Assembly: GCF_022045235.1 (NCBI RefSeq)
Contig: NW_027266273.1
Coordinates: 29,140,001-29,204,000, forward strand
Direction: 5' to 3'
Length of the DNA stretch: 64,000 nucleotides
DNA from: Haliotis cracherodii
Taxonomy: Eukaryota
Positions within the stretch are counted from its first letter, which is position 1. Every line of letters starts with the position of its first letter. The notes under the pieces were generated by a model that ran no database searches, had not been told where the DNA came from, and was given only the letters and a program-made list of their open reading frames with translations. The translations under genes were made by a program, and so were the position numbers. Positions 44,602 through 58,924 of this stretch are shown one piece after another.

Positions 44602-44689
44602 CCCTTACGAAAAAAAAGGCCTGAAAAGATGCATCCCAGACCGCCTTAATCATTCCCCGCAAAGCACATTTTTACCTTCTCCGCAGGGT

Positions 44690-45505
44690 CTTCAGGAAGT
44701 CTCTAAATATTCCCAGCAAATGTCTCCATACCATCTCGGCAAACCACTCCCAACTTGCAGCTTGCCAAGAAGTATCAGAGACTTCCTTACAGTACCTACT
44801 GAAGTAGTCTCCGATACCGCCTCAGAACTAACCTTTTATGGCTAATTAAATATGCTTTGAAACATCCCGGCAAAACTACTAAGGAAGTCCCCAGTTATTC
44901 TCCACAAACTTGTGTTACATAATCAAAGATGTTTTTGAAGCATCCCTGCAACACTTGCAAGGAGGTCTCCGAAGCGTCTTCACAAATCTATCAGGGGTAA
45001 TTAAATGCTTTGAACCATCCCAGCAAACCTTCTTAGGAAGTCCCTGAATAGTCTCCACAAACTATTATTAGGTAATTAAAGATGTTTCTGAAGCATCCCT
45101 GCAACACTTGCAAGGAGGTCTCCGAAGCGTCTTCACAAATCTATCAGGGGTAATTAAATATGCTTTGAACCATCCCGGCAAACCTTCTTAGGAAGTCCCT
45201 GAATAGTCTCCACAAACTATTATTAGGTAATCAAAGATGTTTCTGAAGCATCCCAGCAACACTTGCAAGGAGGTCTCCGAAGCGTCTTCACAAACCTATC
45301 AGGAGTGATTAAATATGCTTTGAACAATCCCGGCAAACCTTTTTAGGAAGTCCCTGAATAGTCCCCACAAACTATTATTAGGTAATTAAAGATGTTTCTG
45401 AAGCATCCCCGCAACACTTGCAAGGAAGTCTCCAAAGCGTCTTCACTAACATGAGTAATTAAATATGCTTTGAACCATCCTGGCAAGCCTTCTTAGGAAG
45501 TCCCC
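44690..45505. repeat. Left subterminal array, about 154-bp unit, 4-5 copies
   Basis: gaagcatccc.gcaacacttgcaagga recurs near 44941, 45094, 45249 and 45404. Each unit consists of two related halves. Confidence 0.92.
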
Positions 45506-46027
45506 ATTACAAAGGTGTTTCAGTGACACTTTTCATCATTTTCAGTAATACATTGCTTATATCATAATCTAGTCTCTGAAACATCCTTGCCAAACATGTA
45601 CTGTCAAAAATGAGATAACAAAGATGCATGGTATTCTCTTTATTTGAAGTTCGCCGGATTGTTCTCACTTTGTGTGACGAAAGTGTTTTTCTTTCACCAA
45701 ATTGATTTTAGACTGACATTTGTAACTTTCACAGTGTTCATTACATAAGCAGCAGCTTCAACAACATAGGTGAGGTGTTTAGCTGGGTGATCCTGTTTCC
45801 TGCTTCAAAGGAGAGATGAGCTGGTCAGCATGGAATGATGTTGCATACCAGACAGTTTTCGGTGGTGGAAGTACCACCACCAACAGAGCACGAGCCACCA
45901 TTTACGGCAAGCATGGGTTTCTGAAGACTACCCCGGATCTTCAAGCAGACACTTCAAGGGGCTGAAATGGGATAAAATAGTACTATTAATCTGTGACAAA
46001 ATTATTATAAAAATTATAGGATGTCAA

Positions 46028-46147
46028 GAGTGAGTGAGTATGGTTTTACGCCGCTCTTAGCAATATTCCAGCAATATAACGGCAGGTGACACCACAAATG
46101 GGCTTCACATATTGTACCCATGTCGGGAATCGAACCCAGGTCTTAGG
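46028..46147 (-). mobile_element. 5'-truncated tRNA-SINE with (TCAC)n tail, in the last intron
   Basis: Minus strand has box B ggttcgattccc...gcggcgtaaaaccatactcactcactc. Confidence 0.85.
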
Positions 46148-47589
46148 ATGTTAAGAAGACGCATTAAAAACTATTTTTGCTACCAGATTACTGATGTAAC
46201 AAATGAAACACAATATAAACTTACCCTGGCTCATTCGCCTGAATGCATTTCTCAAGGTACAAATCTTCTTGCTAAGTGCATCAGAAAACTGATTGGGAAG
46301 CAACTTGAGCCTCTCAGTGGCAAAAACTGCAAAATAACAAATCATTTGATAAAATAAAATAATATAAAATGACATTGTTGTATTTAATATTTATAGTATA
46401 TATCCATTATCAGTGTATTTAAATTCTTTAATACCGCTTTCGGGGGGTATTTATTAATTTCCTCATGAAACTTGAGAATTTGAGTTGTTTAGATAATACT
46501 TACTCTCTAGAGCCTGCAATACAACGGCATGTTTTCTTTTAAACATTGCAGCAGTGCCTTGTCCAACGTCGGAGGGTTCAAAAAATCCATCCATGAAGCG
46601 CTTTAGTTTCCCACAATCCCCTACATTGCAAGACTTTGCCATCACATGTGCATACCATGTGATGGGAACGGCCAGGCTGGCACCTTGAGTCAGTAGTTGA
46701 TATCCTGATGGGAGCTTGTCATCTCCCCTGAGCTGTACCTGTTAACCCAAAAATTATGAGCAATTCAAATGACATGCAGTAGTGAAGTAAAAAACAACTG
46801 TATGCAAATTAAATTCAATTTCGGAAGCTGAAATGTCTATAAACAGCATATTCATTTACTTACATAATGGCATCTTGGCACCTGTACGCCTCGAAGGGGC
46901 TTGTACGTTGGCGGCTTCGTTGTGGTGTCTGCAAAATATTAAACAACAAAAAATTATTCTATGGGGTAGTGTTGTGATGTGAACAACTAGGATAACAAGG
47001 TGAAGATTTATTTTTTTGTGTTATTTGTATATTTTATTTATTTACCATTTTTTTTATTTTAACATTTCCATTTATTATACTGGTATTGCATATAATAAGA
47101 ATAGCAACTGATTTTTTTTTAAAGATGATTTTCAAGCATCTCTGTTTCAACATACCTGGCACATTTGTCTGAAGTTCACGAACTTCTTCTTCGGCCTTAA
47201 GGGCTCGGTCCCTCCAAAGGTTTAGTTCTGTTTGTAGCGTTTGTATCTGCACTTCTTTCAAAGGGCAGTCTTCACAGCTTCTTAGCAGAGCCGTAAATGC
47301 GCCAGGTTCTTGGGCAGTTAGTTGAGGGGTGGGGGACTGTTGCTATACATGCTTAAAAGGGTTGTAGGTTGTGATAGGCCATTGTTGTGCGCTGGGGTGT
47401 TGGGTCAGCAAGGCTGGGGAAGGCTGGGGTAGGCAAGGCTGGTTAGGAAATGCAAGGGGGGGGTTGTAAAGGCTGGGGAGAACTGTGGTAGTGGTTTGAA
47501 GGCTGAGGAGAGTGCAGTGACTGGGAAGGCTGGGAAGGTTGATGTGAGCGAGAAGGCAGAGATGAGTGAAGCAACTGGGAAGGCCAGGT

Positions 47590-47995
47590 GGAGTTACTTG
47601 ATGGGGAAGGCTGATGCGAGTTAGTGGACGGGGAAGGTTGATGCGAGTTACTTGATGGGGCAGGCTGATGTCAGTTAGTGGACGGGGAAGGTTGATGCGA
47701 GTTAGTGGACGGGGAAGGTTGATGCGAGTTAGTGGACGGGGAAGGTTGATGCGAGTTAGTGGACGGGGATGGTTGATGCGAGTTAGTGGACGGGGAAGGT
47801 TGATGCGAGTTAGTGGACGGGGAAGGTTGATGCGAGTTAGTGGACGGGGAAGGTTGATGCGAGTTAGTGGACGGGGAAGGTTGATGCGAGTTAGTGGACG
47901 GGGATGGTTGATGCGAGTTAGTGGATGGGGAAGGAGGCTGATGCGAGTTACTGGATGGGGAAGGAGGCTGATGTGAGTTACTGGATTGGGAAGGC
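47590..47995 (-). repeat. 27-bp coding minisatellite (SPSTNSHQP)n
   Basis: About 14 copies of gttgatgcgagttagtggacggggaag. Confidence 0.95.
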
Positions 47996-50017
47996 TGGAG
48001 TGCTCTGCTAGTGAACAAAGATTTTGCCCTCTGGTTAGCAAGTCTGGAGCGAAGTTCCTGCTGATTTTTCTTTGCCGCCTTCAGAACTGTTGAAAAAAGA
48101 ATACATGTTACACAGGATGACAAAATCAATGCTTCATAATTCATGATACAGTAAAAATAAATTGCAAACAAAGAGCATTAAAGGCATTCAGGTGAAATGG
48201 TTCAAGGTATAATGTTTTAATAGCTACAGAACAAACCACTTGTCTGTGACTTGGCTGATGCTAGCCTGGTCTTCTTGTTCCTCTTGGATGGAGATTCTGA
48301 AGGAAAACAACAACAAATAAAGCAGGTACCAAACTAGATTTAAATGTTATCAATTAGTTGAGATCTTGTGATTAGACAGTTAATAGTGATGTCCATGTTT
48401 GTTGACCAAAATCATTACACACTAAATGTGTTCTAGAGTAATGTAAGAAATGGTCATGCAATTTACAAGTACTCAGTGCTCAAACACTCAAGTTTGAATT
48501 ATTCCATAATGCAGAGATTGTAGACTACCTAACACAGGAAAGATTATGTATTTTGTAACACACCTCTATTCCTTACTATGATTCCGAGTATCATCATAAT
48601 TGAACATTACATTTTTTAAATTAACTCTTTACCTATGCGTGCAAGTTTCATAACTTATTTAGTAACAGTAACCTAAAATTAAATATACCCCCTGACACTT
48701 AAAAAAACAACTGACCTTGGAGTACCACACTGGTGATGGTGGCATCATAAAAACAACCAGTATCTGGCCACCAGGCAGCAACTGGCATCTTCTCCTTAAC
48801 CCCCTCCCACGTAACAGGCTCATCATCAGGAGTTGTAACTTCTCCCAAGTCTGTTATATATCTTTCCTTTTTATCTTCAAACTGCACCACTAGGAAGGGG
48901 GCTGAAAAGTCAAGTTGCATTCATTAATAACATAAAACTAAACTGTCAGGCAAAGTTGACAATAACTTTACAACAAATATTATTACAACCTGGTGCCAGC
49001 CCAAATCATAATTCTAGATGTCTGCCGTAATAGCCATGGTGCATGTCGACGGGGAAATCGGCATAAAGCAACGTAATTTTCATGAACCACAACATTTACA
49101 GGAACGATGGTAATATATTCATTTCCAACATATACATTACAGTAAAAGAATTGCCCTTACTTGAGAGTTCTTTAAAAAAAAATCTACCAACCTCCTCGTG
49201 AAAACAGCAGGTTCCAAAATGGCGGCGATACGGTACCATACAACTATTGACATTTGTGTGTAAAAAAGCAAACTATGTTTCATTTTATAAAAAAATAATT
49301 TAAAACAGAGTTTAAAATAAAACAAATATATATTGTTATCTAATAATTTAATAATTTCATAAACACAGACTACAGTATGTGATCATATTTCACATTTCAG
49401 TGACCAGGTACCTAATTTGTTTTGGGAAAATACTATATATCCCAATCCACCCTTCGCCGCCCCGTAAATCTTACGGAGAAGCACGATGTGATCGAAACGT
49501 GAAATCTGGAAGTCCGGCACAATATTACAAGCAATTACATCTATGCCTATTATTTTTTAGTGAATAATCACTGGCAGTCGTAAATTATATAAATAAAAGG
49601 TCCAACATTTAAAGTTATGATTTAAACTTCAGCCATATTTATTACATAAAAAAAACGTTTTTCCATTTCAGTTTTGAGGTTCCCAAATTAAGAACATAAA
49701 TATACGATTCATGAATGGACATTGAAAAGGATTTCTTTTTCAGGTCACGCTAAAATTTAGTTCAATATCTAAATGAGAATTGGTTTGGATGGGGGTCGTT
49801 TCTGTGGTATGTAGACAATGTAGGGGGCAATAATTTATAACATATATTTACGTTAACCAAATCTAACATATCTAGATCTTATATAAATCTAAAATGTACC
49901 TACCATTTGTTCGGGAACATACGTTGTCTTCCTTGCTGAACTCGGAGTCAGCGTACCTCGATGAAGGTTTGGTGACTCTCTTATTGCCACGGATTTCAGC
50001 CATCTTAGAGGGTGACG

Positions 50018-50228
50018 TACGTTTGTGGCAAAAGTATTCTTTTCAACTCAAGAGCGGACAGATCTCACAAATTTGATGAAAGCGATAAATTGGACAATGT
50101 ACTGACGGAAGCGGACAAACTGATTACGTTTGTGGCAAAATTCTTTTTAGCGTAAAAGCAGACAGATCTCACAAATTGGATGAAAGCGATAGATTGGGCA
50201 GTATTGACGGATGCGAACAGACTGATAA
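50018..50228. repeat. About 105-bp tandem duplication in the intergenic region
   Basis: tacgtttgtggcaaaa...gacagatctcacaaatt.gatgaaagcgata...actgat occurs twice. Confidence 0.85.
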
Positions 50229-50774
50229 CATTTGACGGAAAAAGGCAAACTATTTATATGCAAGTGCTTGTGAAAGGCAAATCTATTAGGTATGATCGGA
50301 GTCAAAACACATTGGTAATATAATTGACATGAGAGGGGCTGACAATTGTTTTGTTGAAACTGACCAGCCTGTGCCCACGCGGAAGTTGGCTTCAGTCCAC
50401 TATATTGTCAACTTCGTATATATACTTATGTAAACATGGCTGTGCGTCTCACACTTGTGACCAGCTTTTCAAATGGTACTGACATCACACACACCTAAAA
50501 CAAAAGACTTGTCACAGGAAGTCGTTTGACAACGCACTGTACATATCTTAATCTGCTTATGCTGTGTTGTGACAAGTTGGCCGAACTTTTACGAGTAGGC
50601 TTTCGGTTCCAAAAACTGCCTAATGTGATGACACGCATGATGAATGGACGGCTTTGAAAATTGCTAAATGAGTTAGAATGTACTGATATTTTAATCTGCA
50701 TTCAAAGAAGAATGAGAGGAACCAATCAAAGGTATCCGCACCCGAGTCATTATAAAGATAGATCGAACGTGCAA

Positions 50775-53311
50775 AACGTGCCCGACTAGAACAAGATATT
50801 AAGACAGGACAACTAAATAAACAATATACCACAGGCATCTTCTTAAACTTCTCTAAAGCTTTCGACATGGTATGGCACGATGGGCTAATACAAAAACTTA
50901 AAAAAATAGGACTCAAAGGTCAGATAATAAACTACATCCAGGACTTCTTAAACAATCGTAAAATAACCGTGGGTATAGACCAAACTCTATCGGACCAATG
51001 TCCCCTAGAAAATGGCACTCCACAAGGGGAGTATCCTCAGCCCCACCCTCTTCAATATAATGATAAACGATCTATTCGAGGGTCTATCCCCTAAAGTAAA
51101 CACATCAAAATTCGCGGATGATGGAGCCATCTGGATCCGCACTAAAAGCATGAAAATGGCCAAAAATCTACTCCAAAAATCTCTTAATAAAATACAACAA
51201 TGGGCTGACAAATGGGGCTTCTCCCTTAACTCAGAAAAAACAACAGGAATAGTATTCAAACATAAAAACATGAAACCCGCCTCCCCAATCCTCCAGCTAA
51301 ACAATCAAACAATCAAATTTCAAAAACAAACCAAATTCTTTGGACTTATTTTCGATGAACATCTCACCTGGGATGCTCACATCCAAAACCTAACAACTAA
51401 ATGCAGTAAAGACCTAAACACCCTAAGATGCCTAACTGGCTCTAACTGGGGAGCCTCCAAAGATACTCTCCTCTCTCTCTACATATCCCTAATTAGATCA
51501 AAACTAGACTACGGCTGCGCCATATACAACACCCTAAACAACTCTCTATCTAAAAAACTTGACTCAATACAATATCAGGCTCTCAAACTCATTACACGCA
51601 CCCAACATGGCACCTCCTACGCCTCACTTCAGGCCTTAACAGGAGAAATGCCACTAAGTCTACGCAGGGAACAGCTAAGCTTAAATTTCTGGGCCGCGTC
51701 CCAATCAAACCCTCTCATCCAAAACTTAATAAACCAAAACATCAGCCCTAAAAACCAAGCTCTAGCTCGTAAACACCCCTTACTTACCCCAATATCCCAA
51801 AGAATAACAAACTACCTAAATGAACACCAAATTAAAAATCTTAAACAAAACTGCAAACAATCAAATATCTTCACCCCTAAACTTAAAATACCCAAAATAG
51901 ACACAACACTAGCTAGCCAAATAAATAAACAAACCGACCCAAACATAGCTAAAACTACCACACTAGCATACATACACAAAAATTGGCCAAATTGGTGTCA
52001 CATTTACACGGACGGATCCTCAGATCCGACCTCCAAACACACGGGTTTCGGAGTCCATGCCACACAACCAACTAAAACCACACAATCCTTCCGACTAGCT
52101 AGCCAAATAAATAAACAAACCGACCCAAACATAGCTAAAACTACCACACTAGCATACATACACAAAAATTGGCCAAATTGGTGTCACATTTACACGGACG
52201 GATCCTCAGATCCGACCTCCAAACACACGGGTTTCGGAGTCCATGCCACACAACCAACTAAAACCACACAATCCTTCCGACTCCCAAATAACCAATCAAT
52301 ATTCACGGCAGAACTAATGGGCATGGCCTCAGCCCTCCACAATCAAGAATCAAAAAACCACCAAAAAATCCTAATACTTACTGACTCCCTAAGTGGACTA
52401 CAAGCCCTCCAAAACAAAAATACCAAAAACCGACCTAAATTAATAAATCAAATACTTAAAAGCTCCAACGACCTAACAAAAGCAGGCAAACAAATAACCT
52501 TCTTGTGGATACCCGCCCATGTAGGAATATACGGTAATGAAAACGCCGATAAAGCAGCTAAACTATCCCTCAAAATCCCAGAAATAAGCTTAAACTTACC
52601 CATCTCAAAATCAGAAATTAAAAGTGTAAACAAACAAAAAATCACAAAAAAATGGCATAACCTATATCTAAACTCAAATAGCCAAATCAAAAGAGTGCTC
52701 AGCAAACCACTAACCAAACCAAAAATTCTCCATCCATCAAAAAAAATCACTAATCACTAAACTCCAAACAGGACACACCAACCTAAATAACCACCAAAAA
52801 AAATTTAAAAAACACACTACAGGTAACTGCCCACGCTGCAAACAACCAGAAACCCCAGAACACGCACTCATCCACTGCACACACTACCTAACACATCGAA
52901 CCGCATTACAAACCACCCTCAATCTAAACAAGGCTCTCACTCTAGAAGCAATACTAAACCCACAAAATAAACTAGAAAACTTCAAGGCCTTAGGCGTATT
53001 CTTAATAAAAACGCAACTAATAAAACGCATCTAAAACCATAATAACCTACCAAATCAAAATCACATAAACAAACAATCATCCACCATACCCAGCTCCCTT
53101 AGTTCTCCTCCCCAACCCCATCGGCATCTATTCCAAATCTCAAAATTCCCAAATTCTATATAAGCAACCCCTAAAGCCCCCTCTTGGGTTGCACAGACCA
53201 CCCTCGCCCCTTTCGGAAACACATTAAATGGCCTGGCCGGGCCCGTGTGCGAAATACGCATCAGTCGGAAAGCGCACGTTAAATCTCCAAAGTAAGTAAG
53301 TAAGTAAGTAA
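50775..53311 (+). mobile_element. 5'-truncated I-superfamily (I/Nimb-like) LINE: RT, RNase H, CCHC finger, (AAGT)n tail
   Basis: FLNFSKAFDMVWH, GTPQG/SILSPTLFNIMIND, FADD, YTDGS...FTAEL...TDSLS...WIPAHVGIYGNENADKAAK, CPRCKQPETPEHALIHC. Possible short TSD GCAA. Confidence 0.93.
51908..52279 (+). repeat. Perfect 186-bp in-frame tandem duplication in the LINE RNase H
   Basis: LASQINKQ...YTDGS...QSFR (62 aa) appears twice. Confidence 0.97.
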
Positions 53312-53453
53312 GCAATTCGAAGACATTAAACCGTCACCGAGTACAAAGAGGATCCAATCGAAGGAACATATTCCGCACCCGAATCATTATAAAAGATAGA
53401 TCGAACCTACAACTCGAAGACATTTAACCTTCACCCAGTACAAAGCTTTGAAC

Positions 53454-56400
53454 ATGGCGGATGGAGGTAAGTTTTCTCGTGGAGCCGTTTTTTGTTTGAC
53501 TTACTCAATTTTTATTATTAAAAATGTAGAATTCTCAACGAACACAAAATTCATATATTATGATTACATATGGAAATCGGAATCCAAACATTTCCTCCAA
53601 ATATAATGCCATTTGTACAGGCATCTACATTCGTACACTTTTGTTTTCTAAAGTTTTATAAGATCGAATAACCACTCGTTAGTAATTCGTTTCCGTTTCG
53701 TTTCGTTTTTCAAAACCTTCTGTTTCAAACATTCGCAAGATGGTGATTGCGACTCAGTAAAAAGATGTAGATCTATACACAAATCCGAAAGACGTGATAA
53801 CAATCACGTATCTAATTGATGAATTCAAATGGTAGTGAGCAACAGTTTAAGTGCTGACATGTATGTAGAAATGGACGGATATATTTAAGATCATGATTTG
53901 TTCGTTATTCAGATCATCAAGAAGACAGCATTGGGAGACTGCGGCCAAGAAAGTACAGGAAAATTGTCAAAGACAAGTAAGTAACTTTAAACTGTCGGGA
54001 AAGGGCCGAATATATGTACACATATGTCAATTCTATTATTGCTAAGCGTCAACTAACTTAGCTTCGATCTGTCGAGTGACACAAAGTTGCATCGCCTTTT
54101 CAGGCCTAGTTTACTTCCACAATAATGTAATGCATGTGGTTATTGCATAGGTCGTAAATCATATGTTTTTCCTCGCCTTGACCGCCAAGAGCTGTAATGA
54201 GCTCTTCTCGTCTGTGTGTACTGTCGTTAACAATTTAATGGTCTGGTTGTTTTATTACCTATTTCCTGCATTTTTGCGTGTCTATGAACATCATCAACAA
54301 ACAAAAGAATAAATAACATGTGAACATGGACCTTGATTCATTTCCATAAATGATATGTTATTTAGCATATTTAAACATTATTTTTAACCTGCTTTGAATT
54401 TGATTTATTTATTGCGAGCTTTTTCACATTAATGGTATGTTATCGGAAATGAAAATGTGCATATTGTATTTTTAGTGTCCCTGAAGGTCATTTTGGACAC
54501 AGAGAGGATGACAAAAGGAGCTCAAAGAAAAGGTATTTTGTCCTTGACTGACTTATGAAATATATTTTCCATGTAGGTCTAAGTATTTTGATTTATTTAA
54601 AATTAAAATATCGGGAGTCATTCCAGAAATAATGCAACATGTGCCCATTGACAAACATTTTAAACATTATATTATACCAACACATAATCATTGCTCATAG
54701 AAAAAATGCCACAGTCATAGCCTTATAGCACTAAAAGCCCGTTTTGAATAATTACCACTATAATGTAATCATGGCTTGTATATCTAACATGTTATATACA
54801 ATTTCTTTTCAGGATTGAGCCCACAAAGAAAAGCATTGTTGATGTTGTTGATGCTCCTTGCACAAGTGCTGCAGAAGGTGAAGATACACTAAAATTTTAA
54901 GGGATATTATTGCCTTACATAATCCATAAATGCATAAATGGCACTTTGCATAATTCAGATCCATAGTTAAATAGACTTCAACTGACTTATCTCATTGTCA
55001 AAAAGTATATGGATGGTTCATGCATGGTGAAATAAATTATTCAGCATATTATTCAGCAAATTACCAGCATTTTCTCTTGTATGATTTATGATTGTGTATT
55101 TGTTTGTACATTATCATGTGCCATTGATTGTTTCAGGACTCACAATCAGTGACCTGTTGACTGATTATGTCCAGCAACAACAGAGGGAAGAGGAACCTGC
55201 CAAGAAAGATGAAGGGAATGGCACCCAGGCTGAGCCCAAGTCAGAAATGGACCAGCCCATATATGATGGACATTGGATGTCCATAGGCTTAAGCATCATG
55301 CTGATATCATTGTTTGCTATGTGTCACTCTGTTACCAGTGCCATGTTGGCCGATTTACTGGTATTGATACGTTTGCACTGTATGTCACAACCTAAAGCCC
55401 TGCAGAGTGTGTATATGCTGAGAAAGACATTTGCTTCTTTCGAATCTCCCCTGCAGAGATTCTATTATTGTAACAACTGTCATTCACCTGTGTCAAAAGA
55501 AAGAAATTTGCCCAAACACTTTTTGTTCAAAGTCCCTCTTAGCCTCTAGTTCTAAGAGTTTTTTCCTTGTGTTCCCACTTTACCATCAGCTGCGTTCCTT
55601 TTTCAAAAACCAAACTTTTGTATCTGGTCTGGGCCACCGATTCCACCGGCAGAAGAAAAATGCAAGAAACTATGAGGACATATATGACTCAAACTTATAT
55701 CAACAATTTGTTGTCAATGATGGACCACTATCAGAAAAGCATCAATACAACATATCATTTACTTTCAACACTGATGGGGTTCCGTTGTTTAAAAGCTCGC
55801 AAATGTCCATGTGGCCAGTATATTTGATGGTTAATGAACTCCCATTCAAACAAAGGAAGTCCAAAACTAATATGCTTATGTATGGGATATGGTTTGGGTC
55901 AACAAAGCCATGTATGAGTACATTTTGTGAACCCCTTCAGGCATCTTTGTCAGACCTTGAAACAAATGGTGTGCAGGTTGAAGTAAATGGTGAATCTGTT
56001 ATTTGCCATTGTTTTCTTATTGCTTTGACTGCTGATTTACCTGCAAAAAGTTCTGTTTTAAATATGGTTCAGTTCAATGGATCTCACAGTTGTCTTTTTT
56101 GCACACAAAAAGGTAAAAACTTCCGAACTGATAAAGGTGGCAATGTTCACATATTCCCTTATGTTGAAGAGGACCCTAGTGGTCCAGCCCGTACCGCCAC
56201 TGATTCAGTTAGAAATTCACTAACTGCTAGCTCTGTACAACCAGTTGAAGGTTACTCCTTTCTTATGAATCTGGCCAGCTTTGATTATGTTCGATCATGC
56301 AGTGTAGACTACATGCATTGTGTTCTTTTAGGCGTAACTAAATTGCTCCTTACTTTATGGTTTTCTTCAGCACATGCTGCCTCAAGGTTTTCTTTATTGC

Positions 56401-57527
56401 CATATGTTAATTCTGTTGACAATTTGCTTTGTTCTGTAAAACCACCATCCAACATATCAAGGCTGCCTAGATCCATAAATGAACATTTAAAATACTGGAA
56501 AGCTGCTGAATTTAGATCATGGCTTCTATTTTACTCAATTCCAATTCTGCAAGGTTTGTTGCCTTATGTGTATTTTTATCATTACACTTGTTTTGTTGAA
56601 GCTATCACCTTACTTTCAATGGACAGTATTTCTGAAGCAGATGTGAAAAATGGACAGGTTTTGTTAGACTATTTTGTCTACATGTTTGCAGATTTGTATG
56701 GAGAGAGATACTTAACACTTAATGTTCACTCTCTTTTGCACTTGCTCTCAACTGTACAGAACCTTGGTCCTCTCTGGGTACATTCTTGTTTCCCATTCGA
56801 AAATCTTAATGGCAATCTTATGTCTATATTTCATGGGACACAACATGTTGACTTACAAATTATGAATGCTTTTAACATGATGCAACTGATGCCTTTAATG
56901 CTATCCTCTGTAAAGAAAGATTCTCCAGCCTATGAATTCCTAACAAAACTCTGCAAGAATTCCCAACACTACTTGCAAGGGTAGTTGACCAAGTCTTGTA
57001 AATTTATTGGTAAGGGCTTCAAGAAGAAGCTCTGTAGTGTCCATAATGTTGCATTGATAGATTTCTTAGGAGCTGAACCTAAAGACTTCATGGTCTTCAA
57101 GCAGCTTAAGTTGAGAGGAAAAACCTTTCATTCCAAAGAGTATGTTAGATCATTGAAAAGAAATTCATCAGCAGTTATGTTCAGAGAAAAAGAAAACAAA
57201 AGAAGGGGTGTTGTCAACTGGTTTTGTTTCACCCAAGATGTCAATTGTATATGTGAAAAAACCCAATGTGATGACAGTTGTAAGATGCTGGCCTGCATCA
57301 CTCCGTACGATGTGGATGCAGGATCCATATTTTCTTCATATGAGGATGAAGTTGACAACTTTCTTGGTGTTGAGCCATCCCATGTAAAATTAGTTAAGGC
57401 ACAGACTGAACACATGGGGGTAGTAATCGTACCAGTTAAGAACTTAATATCCTTATTGATCCCAGTTGTTATTGATGACACCCTTTTCTTTTGTGAACAA
57501 CCCAACAACATAGAAGGTGACTTGTAA
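53454..57527 (+). pseudogene. EnSpm/CACTA transposase, 5 exons (near-intact)
   Basis: Exons 53454-66, 53913-76, 54476-532, 54813-77 and 55137-57527 splice in frame. Motifs FNTDGVPLFKSS..WP, TADLPAK, DYMH, WKAAE, NVHSLLHL, GPLWVHSCFPFE. One frameshift at about 55500 and a stop at 56982-84. Confidence 0.9.
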
Positions 57528-58289
57528 TGTTATTGAACTAAGGACATAATGAAATAACTTGAAATTGGCTCATCTGGGACATTTGTTGAAAATATTAAAT
57601 TCATTCAAATACATGAATAGTGAATCAAGATGTTAATTTATTGCATTTATGTAAATAACCTCAAATCAATATATTGGTAAATGCATGCATAAGAAACAAA
57701 TACTGTATAAACAGTTTTTTTCAACAATGAATGGATAGTCACTTTTAATCACTCCCTCATTCTGTTGAGAAAAGAACTTTCTTACACATCTTTTGTGTTC
57801 ATATTTCACATTCCCCCGTGCAGGTGTCAGGATAAATATCCAGCAGGTTTTATAGAGAAACCCTCTGACATCTTAAAATTCCTGTGTTGGCTATTCTTAT
57901 ATACCTTTTTTCTGATGAGACTGTTATATGGCACACAAACACTGTTACTTTCTGATTGAAATTTATGAATATATTGTACATTCTTTTCATTTTCCAGAAT
58001 ATTGTATACTCAAATTCCTGCATTTGTTTTTACTGTATTTAATAAAAATATACCTAGAAGAATTAATTGTGTTGAGTATTTCATTATTTATGTCTTTGTT
58101 GACATACATAGGATTTTCTAATTCATTGCATGTGAATTTATAAGATCAATAGTTTTAAAGAAAATTCAAAGTAAATAATAAAGATCATGTCATCAAGGTG
58201 CTAGGTCTTGACTGAAGCTCAGTCTATTGAATGGTATCAAAGGGTGTCTTTGAAAGGCATATACTTACAAAAGTCTTCATTTGGTTTTG

Positions 58290-58900
58290 GAAAGTGAGGA
58301 TGCATTGCAAACCATTTTTCAAGTTGCCTAGTGATGAAGTAGTCTCCAAACAATTGTTTCGAAGATCTCCACTAGCAAACTAGGAAACTCCACTGTATCT
58401 TTTCAATTTTGTATGTAAAGAAGTCGCCGATACATCCTCGCAAACAGTCAACTATTTTCTTGCCTTGTGAAGAAGTCTCTGAATAGTATTCACAAAGTCT
58501 TTGTGTGGTCTTTGCTAGCGAGGATGCACTTGATACATCCTTGCAAACCTTCAGCTACTTTATTGCCATTCTGAGGAAGTCTCCGAATAGTCTTTGCAAA
58601 TTGTTTTGAAGGTCTTCGCTAGCGGAGACGTATCTGAGACATCTTAGCTTTTTTGCTGGTCTGTGGAGAAGTCTCCGAAACATCTTTAGAGATCTCCCCA
58701 GACATCCACTGCTAGTGGAGATGCATTAGAAGCGTCTTCGGTGACATTAGTATATAATTGCCCTTTTGGGGAAGTACTTGATTATTCCCCAGAATAGTCT
58801 TTGATGGGTCTCCACCAAGTCTCGGCTAGCCAAGACCATAAAAATTGGCTAAAATCCCACAAAAGATGCATCGGGACGGTCTCGGGTGGTCTCGGATACA
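58290..58900. repeat. Right subterminal repeat region
   Basis: Recurrent gaagtctccga, gatacatc and gaggatgca motifs related to the left array. Confidence 0.75.
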
Positions 58901-58924
58901 TCTTTTCTGGGGTTTTTTGATGGG

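What the first reader, a model, noticed from the sequence alone, without database searches (positions are those of the whole stretch)
45954..48901. Transposon-borne Tudor-like + BEN-like protein: candidate chromatin reader and end-binding or anti-silencing factor
Seen: seven phase-consistent exons. The N-terminal part has VAAWWPDTGCFYDATITSV, similar to the aromatic-cage strand of Tudor domains (SMN: AIWSEDGCIYPATIASI). It is followed by a basic NLS-like PSKRNKKTR, SP repeats, a coiled coil (IQTLQTELNLWRDRALKAEEEVREL) and a C-terminal LKRFMDGFFEPSDV...VLQALEIFATERL...FSDALSKKICTLR that fits the BEN helical pattern. Known: BEN domains bind DNA and occur in TE accessory genes; Tudor domains read methyl-Lys/Arg. 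Inference: the protein could couple the element ends to methylated histones or PIWI-pathway proteins.
Basis: partly seen in the sequence, partly recalled or inferred. Interest (0 to 1): 0.8.

Follow-up and report, generated by a model that had tools for sequence, protein, structure and literature searches.

The report
Abalone CACTA transposon's expressed accessory gene
This is a real, transcribed and spliced second gene of a cut-and-paste (CACTA/EnSpm) transposon in an abalone genome; it has evolved under selection, but the copy here is broken and its proposed Tudor-like and BEN-like domains remain only weakly supported.

Summary
Seven GT-AG, phase-consistent minus-strand exons lie at 48901-45954. 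Spliced transcript contigs identical to the window confirm their junctions. An eighth upstream exon (49239-49161) appears in a Haliotis rufescens RefSeq model, XP_048245672.1.

The gene lies inside a CACTA/EnSpm-type element, 44602 to about 58924. The element has a Transposase_21 gene on the other strand, and a 13-bp motif occurs only in its two subterminal regions. At least 22 internally deleted derivatives exist. Copies diverged under purifying selection, with dN/dS 0.10-0.15.

The window copy is a transcribed pseudogene. It carries a TGA in the Ser/Pro repeats, a frameshift in a C8 run, and a TAG where other copies have TGG.

"Tudor-like" is partly supported. Only a beta1-beta2 hairpin is detectable, and Pfam SGF29_Tudor scores below its cut-off. 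Its W and F-Y residues are kept in 10 of 10 copies.

"BEN-like" rests on ESM Atlas neighbours alone. All six sequence or profile tests were negative, and both AlphaFold models were unusable.

End-binding or chromatin reading is inference. The scan had already noted this same stretch as a two-gene CACTA element (s1-826238).

The parts
49161..49239 (-).
   Evidence: ORF. It is 24 of 27 residues identical to the start of P0009. The donor CTCAA|GTAAGG was read. In X4 record 19 the E0-E1 intron is retained. No contig showing the E0-E1 splice itself was listed.
48716..48901 (-). Exon E1: PFLVVQFEDKKERYITDL...MPVAAWWPDTGCFYDATITSVVLQ, the Tudor-like part
   Evidence: Sequence. Borders from X1 record 4 and X2 record 14. 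Pfam SGF29_Tudor E 5.8e-4 at 20.3 bits, cut-off 23.8.
48237..48296 (-). Exon E2, 60 nt: ESPSKRNKKTRLASAKSQTS (basic, NLS-like)
   Evidence: Sequence. A 60-nt gap in records 4, 14 and 19 lies between the flanking exons. P0009 residues 89-108.
47156..48086 (-). One long exon (E3+E4). It holds a basic stretch, Ser/Pro-rich 9-aa tandem repeats (47591-47997) and a coiled coil (about 47264-47157). Lesions in this copy: TGA 47671-47673, frameshift in the C8 run 47456-47463, TAG 47343-47345
   Evidence: X1 record 3 runs unbroken across 47156-47641 with 0 other letters. At 47344, X2, X4 and X19 read C (TGG) where the window and X1 read T (TAG).
46864..46928 (-). Exon E5: DTTTKPPTYKPLRGVQVPRCHY
   Evidence: Joints 46735>46861 (cut +3) and 46928>47156 in X1, X2 and X4. 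23 of 23 residues identical to P0009.
46504..46738 (-). Exon E6: first part of the C-terminal helical (BEN-like?) domain, VQLRGDDKLPSGYQ...KLKRFMDGFFEPSDVGQGTAAMFKRKHAVVLQALE
   Evidence: Borders. 75 of 78 residues identical to P0009. dN/dS is 0.15 against C80 and 0.10 against C3. A T-run in this exon varies in length and shifts the frame in copies C16, C80 and C3.
46225..46326 (-). Exon E7: second part of the C-terminal domain, (I)FATERLKLLPNQFSDALSKKICTLRNAFRRMSQ
   Evidence: X1 record 1, X2 record 13 and X4 record 18. 33 of 34 residues identical to P0009.
45954..45961 (-). Last coding exon E8 (AP, stop). The transcript continues as 3' UTR to at least 45900
   Evidence: X1 record 1 joins 46225 to 45961 and runs to 45900. 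P0009 ends ...MSQAP.
44602..44645 (.). Left terminus of the element, an imperfect terminal inverted repeat with the right end
   Evidence: Homology to copies on C16, C1 and C67 starts or stops exactly at 44602. Sequence.
44695..45504 (.). Left subterminal region: 155-bp tandem array (44843-45504, 4.3 copies) carrying 9 copies of a GGAAGTCTCCGAA-like motif
58471..58924 (.). Right subterminal region (3 motif copies, 58471-58679) and right terminus
   Evidence: Homology to the C67 derivative ends at 58918. Sequence.
55431..56981 (+). Transposase ORF of the same element, divergent from the accessory gene. An in-frame stop at 56982-56984 is followed by a further 180-aa ORF
   Evidence: Pfam Transposase_21 E 1.7e-9 at 37.6 bits (cut-off 28.6); DUF1258 E 1.1e-15. 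The stop is seen.

Best explanation
The locus is the non-transposase (accessory) gene of a CACTA/EnSpm-superfamily DNA transposon of an abalone. It fills the role that TnpA has in plant En/Spm, without being its homologue.

Shown:
- It is an 8-exon gene, transcribed and spliced.
- It sits between the left subterminal repeats and a divergently oriented Transposase_21 gene.
- It has diverged between element lineages under strong purifying selection.
- Deleted, non-autonomous derivatives keep the element ends but carry a dead copy of the gene.
- The intact product (about 510-555 aa) has five parts: a beta-rich N-terminal module with a Tudor-like beta1-beta2 hairpin; a basic patch; a long Ser/Pro-rich repeat linker of variable length; a coiled coil; and a roughly 110-aa helical, basic C-terminal domain.
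- The window copy is an expressed pseudogene. It could give at most a truncated protein of the N-terminal module plus linker.

Inferred:
- The coiled coil dimerises the protein.
- The C-terminal domain, most likely a cryptic BEN-type fold, binds the GGAAGTCTCCGAA-like motif reiterated in both subterminal regions.
- The protein thereby pairs the ends, recruits the transposase and/or regulates the element's promoter.
- The Tudor-like module and the disordered linker contact chromatin or host proteins.
- The protein acts in trans on the deleted derivatives.
For: Gene and expression. Exon junctions appear in contigs of X1, X2 and X4 and are absent from run X19 (kind unmarked by the tool; I took it for DNA). 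The X1 contigs are 100% identical to the window. The same model exists as RefSeq XP_048245672.1 / XP_046333175.2.

Transposon context. Transposase_21 is over its cut-off. The element ends are defined by homology at 44602 and 58918. 12 of 12 motif matches lie in the two subterminal regions, against 0.79 expected, and 0 of 100 shuffles reach 12. Exon 1 has 32 matches in the genome from 39 candidates, and 22 of them list two in-frame TGA. Eight sampled derivatives are 95.3-99.1% identical in all 28 pairs.

Selection. dN/dS is 0.14 over 257 codons against the C16 copy (pS 0.336, pN 0.060). For exon 6 it is 0.15 (73 codons) against C80 and 0.10 (53 codons) against C3.

Domains. The W and F-Y of the hairpin are kept in 10 of 10 copies read. 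For the C-terminal domain, 24 of the 30 nearest clusters are BEN, with top score 0.91 and 185 of 256 shared features, and BEND7 is a structural neighbour at TM 0.54 over 110 residues. BEN genes of this same genome show the same layout of coiled coil, Ser/Pro-rich stretch and C-terminal BEN. BEN domains invisible to sequence searches are documented for LIN-14 (PMC10080584, passages read).

Precedent for a fast-evolving TnpA-like second protein in an animal CACTA element: SmTRC1 (PMC1636069, passages read).
Against: No DNA-binding or chromatin-binding function was tested.

BEN has no sequence support. There are no Pfam hits. PF10523 finds 7 places in the genome, none at this family. hhalign gives 0.15% and 0.6%. 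Custom HMMs give -1.2 and -1.4 bits, with 941 and 661 of 2000 shuffles scoring at least as high; the third HMM reported no score at all. The PDB profile search finds no BEN chain.

The Atlas warns that 4-10% of shuffled proteins also reach 0.9, and that its figures were not measured on parts of proteins.

Both AlphaFold models are unusable (pLDDT 35.7 and 39.0), and Foldseek on the C-terminal model found nothing.

The Tudor match covers half a domain and stays under Pfam's cut-off.

The motif copies are mostly in the same orientation at both ends: 8 of 9 on the left and 3 of 3 on the right are '+'.

The termini do not begin with CACTA.

The C16 copy has no transposase within 10 kb.

No homologue outside Haliotis was found.
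Confidence: 0.55

Rival explanations
1. It is the element's accessory gene, but neither domain call is right. On this reading the N-terminal part is a family-specific beta module that shares only a short W..FY hairpin motif with Tudor domains. The C-terminal part is a new helical domain unrelated to BEN. Its function could be DNA binding, transposase binding or something else.
For: All six sequence or profile tests for BEN were negative. The Tudor hits are below Pfam's cut-off and cover about 20-30 residues. No beta3-beta4 follows the hairpin. No homologues were found to build a deep profile. Both AlphaFold models have low confidence.
Against: Two Atlas read-outs point to BEN for the C-terminal part and to KDM4-type double Tudor for the N-terminal part. 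The domain layout matches this genome's own BEN genes. The Tudor HMM scores 11.2 bits against a best shuffle of 6.9, with 0 of 2000 shuffles reaching it. That HMM was built from proteins picked by this very exon, so the test is partly circular.
Confidence: 0.3
2. It is a passenger or a domesticated host gene. On this reading a host chromatin-factor gene or gene fragment was captured by the element (Pack-CACTA style). Alternatively, one copy has been co-opted by the host. In either case it plays no part in transposition.
For: RefSeq annotates it as an ordinary gene. It is expressed. Only four loci carry the full C-terminal domain. The abundant derivatives move without a working copy.
Against: Purifying selection is seen between copies that lie in different element lineages and loci (dS 0.45 to about 1.0, dN/dS 0.10-0.15). 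That is expected for a gene the element needs, not for a passenger. Every full copy examined is flanked by the element's own terminal sequences. No host paralogue lacking element ends was found. Trans-mobilised derivatives with dead genes are normal for two-gene elements.
Confidence: 0.12
3. It is not a gene: the open frames arose by chance in repeat-rich DNA.
For: The tandem 27-nt repeats keep several frames open.
Against: Spliced transcript contigs with exact GT-AG borders exist. Third-position changes dominate between copies. A matching RefSeq model exists.
Confidence: 0.01

Closest known systems
TnpA of maize En/Spm (plant CACTA accessory protein)
   Same: It is a second, non-transposase product of a CACTA-superfamily element. 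The element carries reiterated short motifs in both subterminal regions. Non-autonomous derivatives are presumably served in trans. TnpA's roles are as summarised in PMC1636069 (passages read).
   Different: No sequence relation was found: no Pfam hit to any plant TnpA family on P0005 or P0009. Here the gene is separate and divergently transcribed, not an alternative splice form of one transcription unit. The domain make-up differs. DNA binding was not tested.
SmTRC-PrA of the Schistosoma mansoni CACTA element SmTRC1
   Same: It is an animal CACTA element that encodes a protein lacking Transposase_21. That protein evolves fast, has no detectable relatives, and was proposed to be a TnpA analogue (PMC1636069).
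   Different: I did not compare the sequences, because none was at hand. SmTRC-PrA comes from alternative splicing of the transposase unit.
BEN-domain DNA-binding proteins (BANP, BEND3, NACC1, Insv; Pfam PF10523)
   Same: The domain is C-terminal, helical and basic, about 100-110 aa, and preceded by a coiled coil and a Ser/Pro-rich stretch, as in this genome's own BEN genes. BEN clusters are the nearest language-model and ESMFold neighbours.
   Different: It fails every sequence or profile test run here. The fold is not confirmed.
Tudor 'royal family' readers (SMN, SGF29 tandem Tudor, KDM4A hybrid double Tudor)
   Same: The VAAWWPD..CFYDATITSV hairpin aligns with beta1-beta2 of SMN, SGF29 and multi-Tudor proteins, including the cage-position W and Y. 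KDM4 double-Tudor clusters are structural neighbours of the ESMFold model.
   Different: It stays below the Pfam cut-off. No beta3-beta4 follows the hairpin. The only beta3-beta4-like stretch (VVQFEDKKERYI) lies upstream of it, so the order is permuted (score -0.7 bits). Binding of methylated residues was not tested.

Membership tests
CACTA/EnSpm (CMC) DNA transposon | DDE transposase of the Transposase_21 (tnp2) family | tested here: met
   ORF 55431-56981: PF02992 E 1.7e-9 at 37.6 bits (cut-off 28.6); DUF1258 E 1.1e-15. The frame has an in-frame stop at 56982-56984.
CACTA/EnSpm (CMC) DNA transposon | Terminal inverted repeats starting CACTA, with a 3-bp target duplication | tested here: inconclusive
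   The ends set by homology (44602, about 58918-58924) form an imperfect inverted repeat that starts CCC..., not CACTA (read by eye). The target duplication is ambiguous.
CACTA/EnSpm (CMC) DNA transposon | Reiterated short motifs in both subterminal regions | tested here: met
   12 matches, all within 44695-45436 or 58471-58679, against 0.79 expected. A 155-bp array of 4.3 copies is present.
Plant TnpA family | Sequence homology to TnpA | tested here: not met
   No such Pfam family among the hits of P0005 or P0009 at E up to 10. The relation is analogy only.
Tudor domain (royal family) | Match to a Tudor-clan profile above the curated cut-off | tested here: not met
   SGF29_Tudor scores 20.3, 16.5 and 19.7 bits against a cut-off of 23.8.
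Tudor domain (royal family) | Five-stranded SH3-like barrel | tested here: inconclusive
   AlphaFold2 mean pLDDT 39.0. ESMFold-model neighbours include KDM4 Tudor_2 clusters in 4 of 10 listed rows, TM 0.51-0.54.
Tudor domain (royal family) | Aromatic cage of about four residues, conserved | tested here: inconclusive
   The W and the F-Y of the hairpin are kept in 10 of 10 copies. The first W varies (L in P0009, S in C80). The beta3-beta4 partners are not in the canonical place. Candidates F and Y in VVQFEDKKERYI lie upstream.
Tudor domain (royal family) | Binds methyl-lysine or methyl-arginine | not testable with these tools
   Needs peptide arrays or ITC.
BEN domain (PF10523) | Match to the BEN profile | tested here: not met
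   No hit on single exons or on full-length P0005 and P0009 at E up to 10. A genome-wide PF10523 scan gives 7 matches from 13 candidates, none at this family.
BEN domain (PF10523) | Profile-profile or custom-HMM similarity to bona fide BEN domains | tested here: not met
   hhalign gives 0.15% against 6 BEN domains of this genome and 0.6% against 81 mostly BANP BEN domains. HMM scores of -1.2 and -1.4 bits are no better than 2000 shuffles. The query profile is shallow (Neff 1.2).
BEN domain (PF10523) | All-alpha fold of 5-6 helices (PMC8887127, passages read) | tested here: inconclusive
   The AlphaFold2 model has mean pLDDT 35.7 and shows four helices in the domain. Foldseek against PDB finds nothing. 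The Atlas ESMFold model has TM 0.54 to a BEND7 cluster, and 24 of 30 feature neighbours are BEN.
BEN domain (PF10523) | Sequence-specific DNA binding | not testable with these tools
   Needs EMSA, PBM or SELEX.

The most novel reading that the evidence does not exclude
Animal CACTA elements of abalones carry a previously undescribed class of accessory protein with two unusual modules. One is a non-canonical Tudor module, either permuted or 'one-and-a-half': beta3-beta4-like strands lie upstream of the beta1-beta2 hairpin, and exon 0 supplies another hairpin. The other is a cryptic BEN DNA-binding domain that sequence profiles cannot see. Joined by a coiled coil, the dimer would tether the element's subterminal repeat arrays to methylated chromatin or to methyl-arginine proteins. 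It would then be a transposon-encoded reader that steers integration or counters silencing.
Probability: 0.12. Interest if true: 0.7.

Novelty: new variant of a known kind. Interest (0 to 1): 0.42.

Why it matters
Two-gene CACTA elements are well understood only in plants, where TnpA binds the subterminal repeats and also reprogrammes the element's own methylation. What the second gene of animal CACTA elements does is essentially unknown.

This locus offers a tractable case. The accessory gene is expressed and selected. It has a clear candidate binding motif in the element ends, an intact allele or copy in the same species, and recently amplified non-autonomous partners.

If the C-terminal domain proves to be a BEN fold, it would tie a metazoan chromatin-factor DNA-binding domain to a DNA transposon. 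It would also be another BEN domain hidden from sequence searches, as LIN-14 was.

If the domain calls fail, the finding is an ordinary, correctly recognised TE accessory gene that RefSeq currently misnames 'MAGE-like protein 2' and 'cell wall protein DAN4-like'.

Tried and rejected
Structure. AlphaFold2 on the C-terminal 198 aa (alignment A3, 10 rows) gave mean pLDDT 35.7. On the N-terminal 108 aa (A4, 8 rows) it gave 39.0. Both are unusable. Foldseek against PDB with the C-terminal model gave 12 rows, all at E >= 3.7. I ran no further fold searches on such models.

Alignments A1 and A2 mis-registered the short exon pieces and were discarded. A3 and A4 were built from fewer, longer pieces.

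Homologue searches.
- phmmer of exon 1 against 1.84 billion representatives gave 8 hits. One is the H. rufescens model and three are multi-Tudor proteins. I did not scan the other four (P0001, P0002, P0004, P0006); they are repetitive proteins and probably spurious.
- The search for homologous proteins with P0005 residues 285-448 found only itself among 207 candidates.
- The same search with the 198-aa C-terminal part found none among 56 candidates.
- These searches see only certain length ranges and need shared 5-residue words, so a blank is weak evidence.

A profile search of this genome with A3 gave 39 matches from 44 candidates. All lie at the known copies or derivatives, with no more distant paralogue.

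PDB sequence searches showed nothing significant.

Rejected idea: the TAG at 47343-47345, shared with the C16 copy, might be the AG of an intron acceptor that removes the repeat region. It fails on two counts. There is no GT donor in a compatible phase (after correcting my 2-nt offset). The X1 transcript contig also runs straight through the region.

Papers. I found no report of BEN domains in CACTA or other DNA-transposon accessory genes (search listings). I found no paper on mollusc EnSpm second ORFs. These searches cover only the held library, and supplements were not consulted.

Not done. The exons were searched one by one, and the RefSeq models P0005 and P0009 served as the full-length reference. 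I did not test the ~6.3-kb derivatives for target duplications.

Full report
WHAT IS THERE. The window is eukaryotic DNA: contig C10 of a 1.18-Gb genome. On the minus strand between 49239 and 45954 lies a multi-exon gene. Reading the sequence gives exons with GT-AG borders and consistent phases:
- E0 49239-49161
- E1 48901-48716
- E2 48296-48237
- E3/4 48086-47156
- E5 46928-46864
- E6 46738-46504
- E7 46326-46225
- E8 45961-45954

Exons were searched one at a time. A phmmer search with exon 1 against 1.84 billion representative proteins returned a public model, P0005, and its cluster-mate P0009. These are Haliotis rufescens XP_046333175.2 (448 aa, named 'MAGE-like protein 2 isoform X2') and XP_048245672.1 (512 aa, 'cell wall protein DAN4-like isoform X1'). 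The names evidently reflect the Ser/Pro-rich low-complexity stretch. P0009 is colinear with the window's exons. Per exon it is identical at 24 of 27, 60 of 65, 23 of 23, 75 of 78 and 33 of 34 residues. It served as the full-length reference.

TRANSCRIPTION AND SPLICING. I laid the contigs of four public runs on 45900-49300. Run X1 has contigs with no difference from the window that join:
- 45961 to 46225
- 46504-46735, then 46861-46928, then 47156-47641
- 47875-48086, then 60 nt, then 48716-48807

Runs X2 (same organism, another sample) and X4 (another organism) show the same joints. Run X19 has unspliced contigs and depth 0 at these joints. The tool left its kind unmarked, and I took it for DNA from its size. 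The tool labels X1, X2 and X4 only as 'RNA? (a guess)'. Spliced forms missing from X19 are what make me read them as RNA.

Three consequences follow.
- The gene is expressed and the exon model is right.
- The Ser/Pro region and the coiled coil are one exon.
- The window's own copy is transcribed, including two of its lesions.

X4 record 19 keeps the E0-E1 intron, which matches the shorter RefSeq isoform that starts at the Met inside E1. No listed contig shows the E0-E1 splice itself.

THIS COPY IS BROKEN. Relative to P0009, the window has three lesions:
- a TGA inside the repeats (47671-47673)
- a one-base frame change in a C8 run (47456-47463)
- a TAG at 47343-47345 where P0009 has Trp

At 47344, runs X2, X4 and X19 read the Trp codon, while X1 and the window read the stop. 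X2 also lacks 47445-47478 (34 nt), which keeps the frame open across the C-run (read by hand). So an open version is expressed in the same organism. Whether it is an allele or another insertion is unknown.

The C16 copy carries a stop at the same codon. I could not explain this. An intron reading was rejected.

THE GENE IS TRANSPOSON-BORNE.
- Homology to copies on C16, C1 and C67 begins or ends exactly at 44602. Homology to the C67 copy ends at 58918.
- The two termini form an imperfect inverted repeat. It begins CCC, not CACTA.
- On the plus strand, ORF 55431-56981 hits Transposase_21 (E 1.7e-9, over the cut-off) and DUF1258.
- A 155-bp array sits at 44843-45504.
- The motif GGAAGTCTCCGAA, allowing up to 2 mismatches, occurs 12 times in 64 kb. 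Nine copies are in 44695-45436 and three in 58471-58679. The expectation is 0.79, and 0 of 100 shuffles reach 12.
- Exon 1 has 32 matches in the genome from 39 candidates scored. These are the window itself, C16 (90%), rearranged copies on C1 (79-89%), a divergent copy on C80 (57%), and 22 rows that list two in-frame TGA.
- The C67 example of that last group is a ~6.3-kb element. It keeps both termini, lacks the transposase region (49985 to 57885 deleted), and has only remnants of the accessory gene.
- Eight such copies are 95.3-99.1% identical in all 28 pairs, so they amplified recently with a dead accessory gene.
- The full C-terminal domain exists only at C10, C16, C80 and C3.

The element in the window is not intact. 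A LINE-type RT/RNase H ORF (51012-52757) sits between the two genes. The transposase frame has a stop at 56982-56984. The C16 copy shows no transposase homology within the next 10 kb.

SELECTION. Between the window and the C16 copy, six exon pieces (257 codons) give pS 0.336 and pN 0.060, so dN/dS is 0.14. Non-coding parts of the two copies are about 72-85% identical. For exon 6, dN/dS is 0.15 against C80 (73 codons, dS about 0.9) and 0.10 against C3 (53 codons, dS about 1.0). The nucleotide alignment shows third-position changes in the window's frame on both sides of a T-run. The length of that run differs in every copy and shifts the frame in C16, C80 and C3. The protein was therefore needed while the element lineages diversified.

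N-TERMINAL MODULE. Evidence for a Tudor-like fold:
- Exon 1 hits Pfam SGF29_Tudor at E 5.8e-4 (20.3 bits, cut-off 23.8). P0009 gives 9.6e-4.
- Three of the 8 phmmer hits are proteins with 3-6 bona fide Tudor repeats by Pfam.
- SMN Tudor chains are the 5 best PDB hits, but at E 0.43-0.81.
- An HMM of 14 Tudor repeats from those three proteins scores the N-terminal 108 aa at 11.2 bits. The best of 2000 shuffles reaches 6.9. The test is partly circular, since the repeats were found with this exon.

What matches is beta1-beta2 only (VAALWPDTGCFYDATITSVV). The residues that follow are a basic, disordered stretch. A beta3-beta4-like stretch (VVQFEDKKERYI) lies upstream of the hairpin and scores only -0.7 bits. 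MAFFT also paired exon 0 (GTCCFHEEVGRFFFKELS) with the hairpin. This suggests a first Tudor-like unit (E0 plus the start of E1) followed by half of a second, or a permuted unit.

The Atlas's ESMFold model has KDM4-type double-Tudor clusters among its neighbours: 4 of 10 listed rows, at TM 0.51-0.54. My AlphaFold model was useless (pLDDT 39.0).

The hairpin's W and F-Y are kept in 10 of 10 copies read. The preceding W is not.

C-TERMINAL DOMAIN. The evidence against BEN is long:
- No Pfam hit on exons 6 or 7, or on P0005 and P0009, at E up to 10.
- PF10523 finds 7 places in this genome, 3 of them over the cut-off, and none in this family.
- hhalign of the family alignment gives 0.15% against six BEN domains of this genome. 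It gives 0.6% against 81 BEN domains, mostly BANP, gathered.
- Two custom HMMs score the domain at -1.2 and -1.4 bits, with 941 and 661 of 2000 shuffles doing as well. The combined HMM reported nothing.
- The PDB profile search lists no BEN chain.
- AlphaFold gave pLDDT 35.7, and Foldseek found nothing.

The evidence for BEN is the ESM Atlas alone. 24 of the 30 nearest clusters by language-model features are BEN, with best score 0.91 and 185 of 256 features shared. The nearest structural cluster is 'BEN domain containing 7', at TM 0.54 over 110 residues (392-512). The tool counts its two read-outs as one source. It also warns that 4-10% of shuffled proteins reach 0.9.

Two pieces of context favour BEN.
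- This genome's own BEN genes have the same order of coiled coil, Ser/Pro-rich stretch and C-terminal BEN.
- BEN domains can be invisible to sequence methods, as for LIN-14, which was recognised only from its predicted structure (PMC10080584, passages read).

BEN folds have 5-6 helices (PMC8887127, passages read). The low-confidence model shows four. I put the chance that this is a BEN-type fold at about one half.

HOW IT PROBABLY WORKS. Shown: this is an expressed, selected, element-internal gene. The element has a motif confined to both subterminal regions. Its derivatives lack a working copy of the gene. Inferred, by analogy with TnpA and with the proposal made for SmTRC1 (PMC1636069, passages read):
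- the protein dimerises through the coiled coil
- it binds the reiterated subterminal motif through its C-terminal domain
- it thereby pairs the ends, recruits the transposase and/or controls the promoter region between the two divergent genes
- it acts in trans on the derivatives
- the Tudor-like module and the long disordered linker would contact chromatin or host factors

None of these steps was tested. The mostly uniform orientation of the motif at both ends does not fit a simple symmetric-end model.

COMPARISON AND NOVELTY. The element type is known, and a TnpA-like second gene is a known feature. The protein itself has no detectable relatives outside Haliotis in the searches I could run. 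It is misnamed in RefSeq. I found no paper linking BEN or Tudor domains to CACTA accessory genes (held library only, supplements closed). I class it as a new variant of a known kind, of moderate interest. The anatomy is solid, and the attractive domain story is unproven.

I agree on the two genes and on the ends, but not on 'complete'.

Noticed in passing
window 46028-46147 (in the last intron of the accessory gene): A ~120-bp very high-copy repeat, SINE-like, starting GTGAGTGAGTATGG. Summed contig depth in that bin is roughly five orders of magnitude above neighbouring bins in all four runs, with many loose ends at 46028 and 46144. Copies also occur in loci L012, L013 and L023. ARAGORN finds no tRNA in it.
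   Followed up: partly
window 50620-53315: A non-LTR retrotransposon fragment is inserted between the two transposon genes. It carries an ORF with RVT_1 and RNase_H (51012-52757). Inside the ORF is a perfect 186-bp tandem duplication (51908-52282, 2.0 copies, 100% match).
   Followed up: partly
window 56982-56984: A single in-frame stop separates the 517-aa transposase ORF from a 180-aa ORF in the same frame. It may be a nonsense mutation or a small intron. An upstream ORF at 55088-55546 overlaps in another frame.
   Followed up: no
window 47343-47345 and L011 (C16) around 4165: The window and the C16 copy have a stop at the same Trp codon. P0009, the C1 copy and runs X2, X4 and X19 have TGG. 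The two copies are only about 72-85% identical in non-coding parts, so this is either a parallel change or gene conversion. It remains unexplained.
   Followed up: partly
window 46575-46585 and the same site in L011, L020, L021: A T-run inside exon 6 has a different length in each of four copies. The spans are 19, 20, 18 and 21 nt between fixed anchors, which puts the two halves of the domain in different frames in C16, C80 and C3. These could be true slippage or homopolymer errors of the assembly.
   Followed up: partly
G000 C1:38566000-38583000 (L012, L025): Two partial copies of the element lie in opposite orientation about 12 kb apart. One has exon 1 split by an insertion of about 290 bp. 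The other has a 28-residue deletion in the coiled coil.
   Followed up: partly
L026 (C3:2149389-2149598) and L027 (C1:80366312-80366518): Two 87%-identical single-exon BEN genes with a coiled coil, then an (A/S)SP-repeat stretch, then a C-terminal BEN domain. L031 and L032 on C6 are a second such pair.
   Followed up: no
window 47445-47478: Run X2's transcript contig lacks these 34 nt and reads TGG at 47344. Together these keep the reading frame open, whereas X1 (same organism, another sample) matches the window exactly. This is a polymorphism or a second insertion.
   Followed up: partly
L011 4886-7012 (C16 copy): The Ser/Pro repeat region is about 2.1 kb in the C16 copy against 0.4 kb in the window. 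Its longer repeat unit carries a stop in the coding frame in most units.
   Followed up: no
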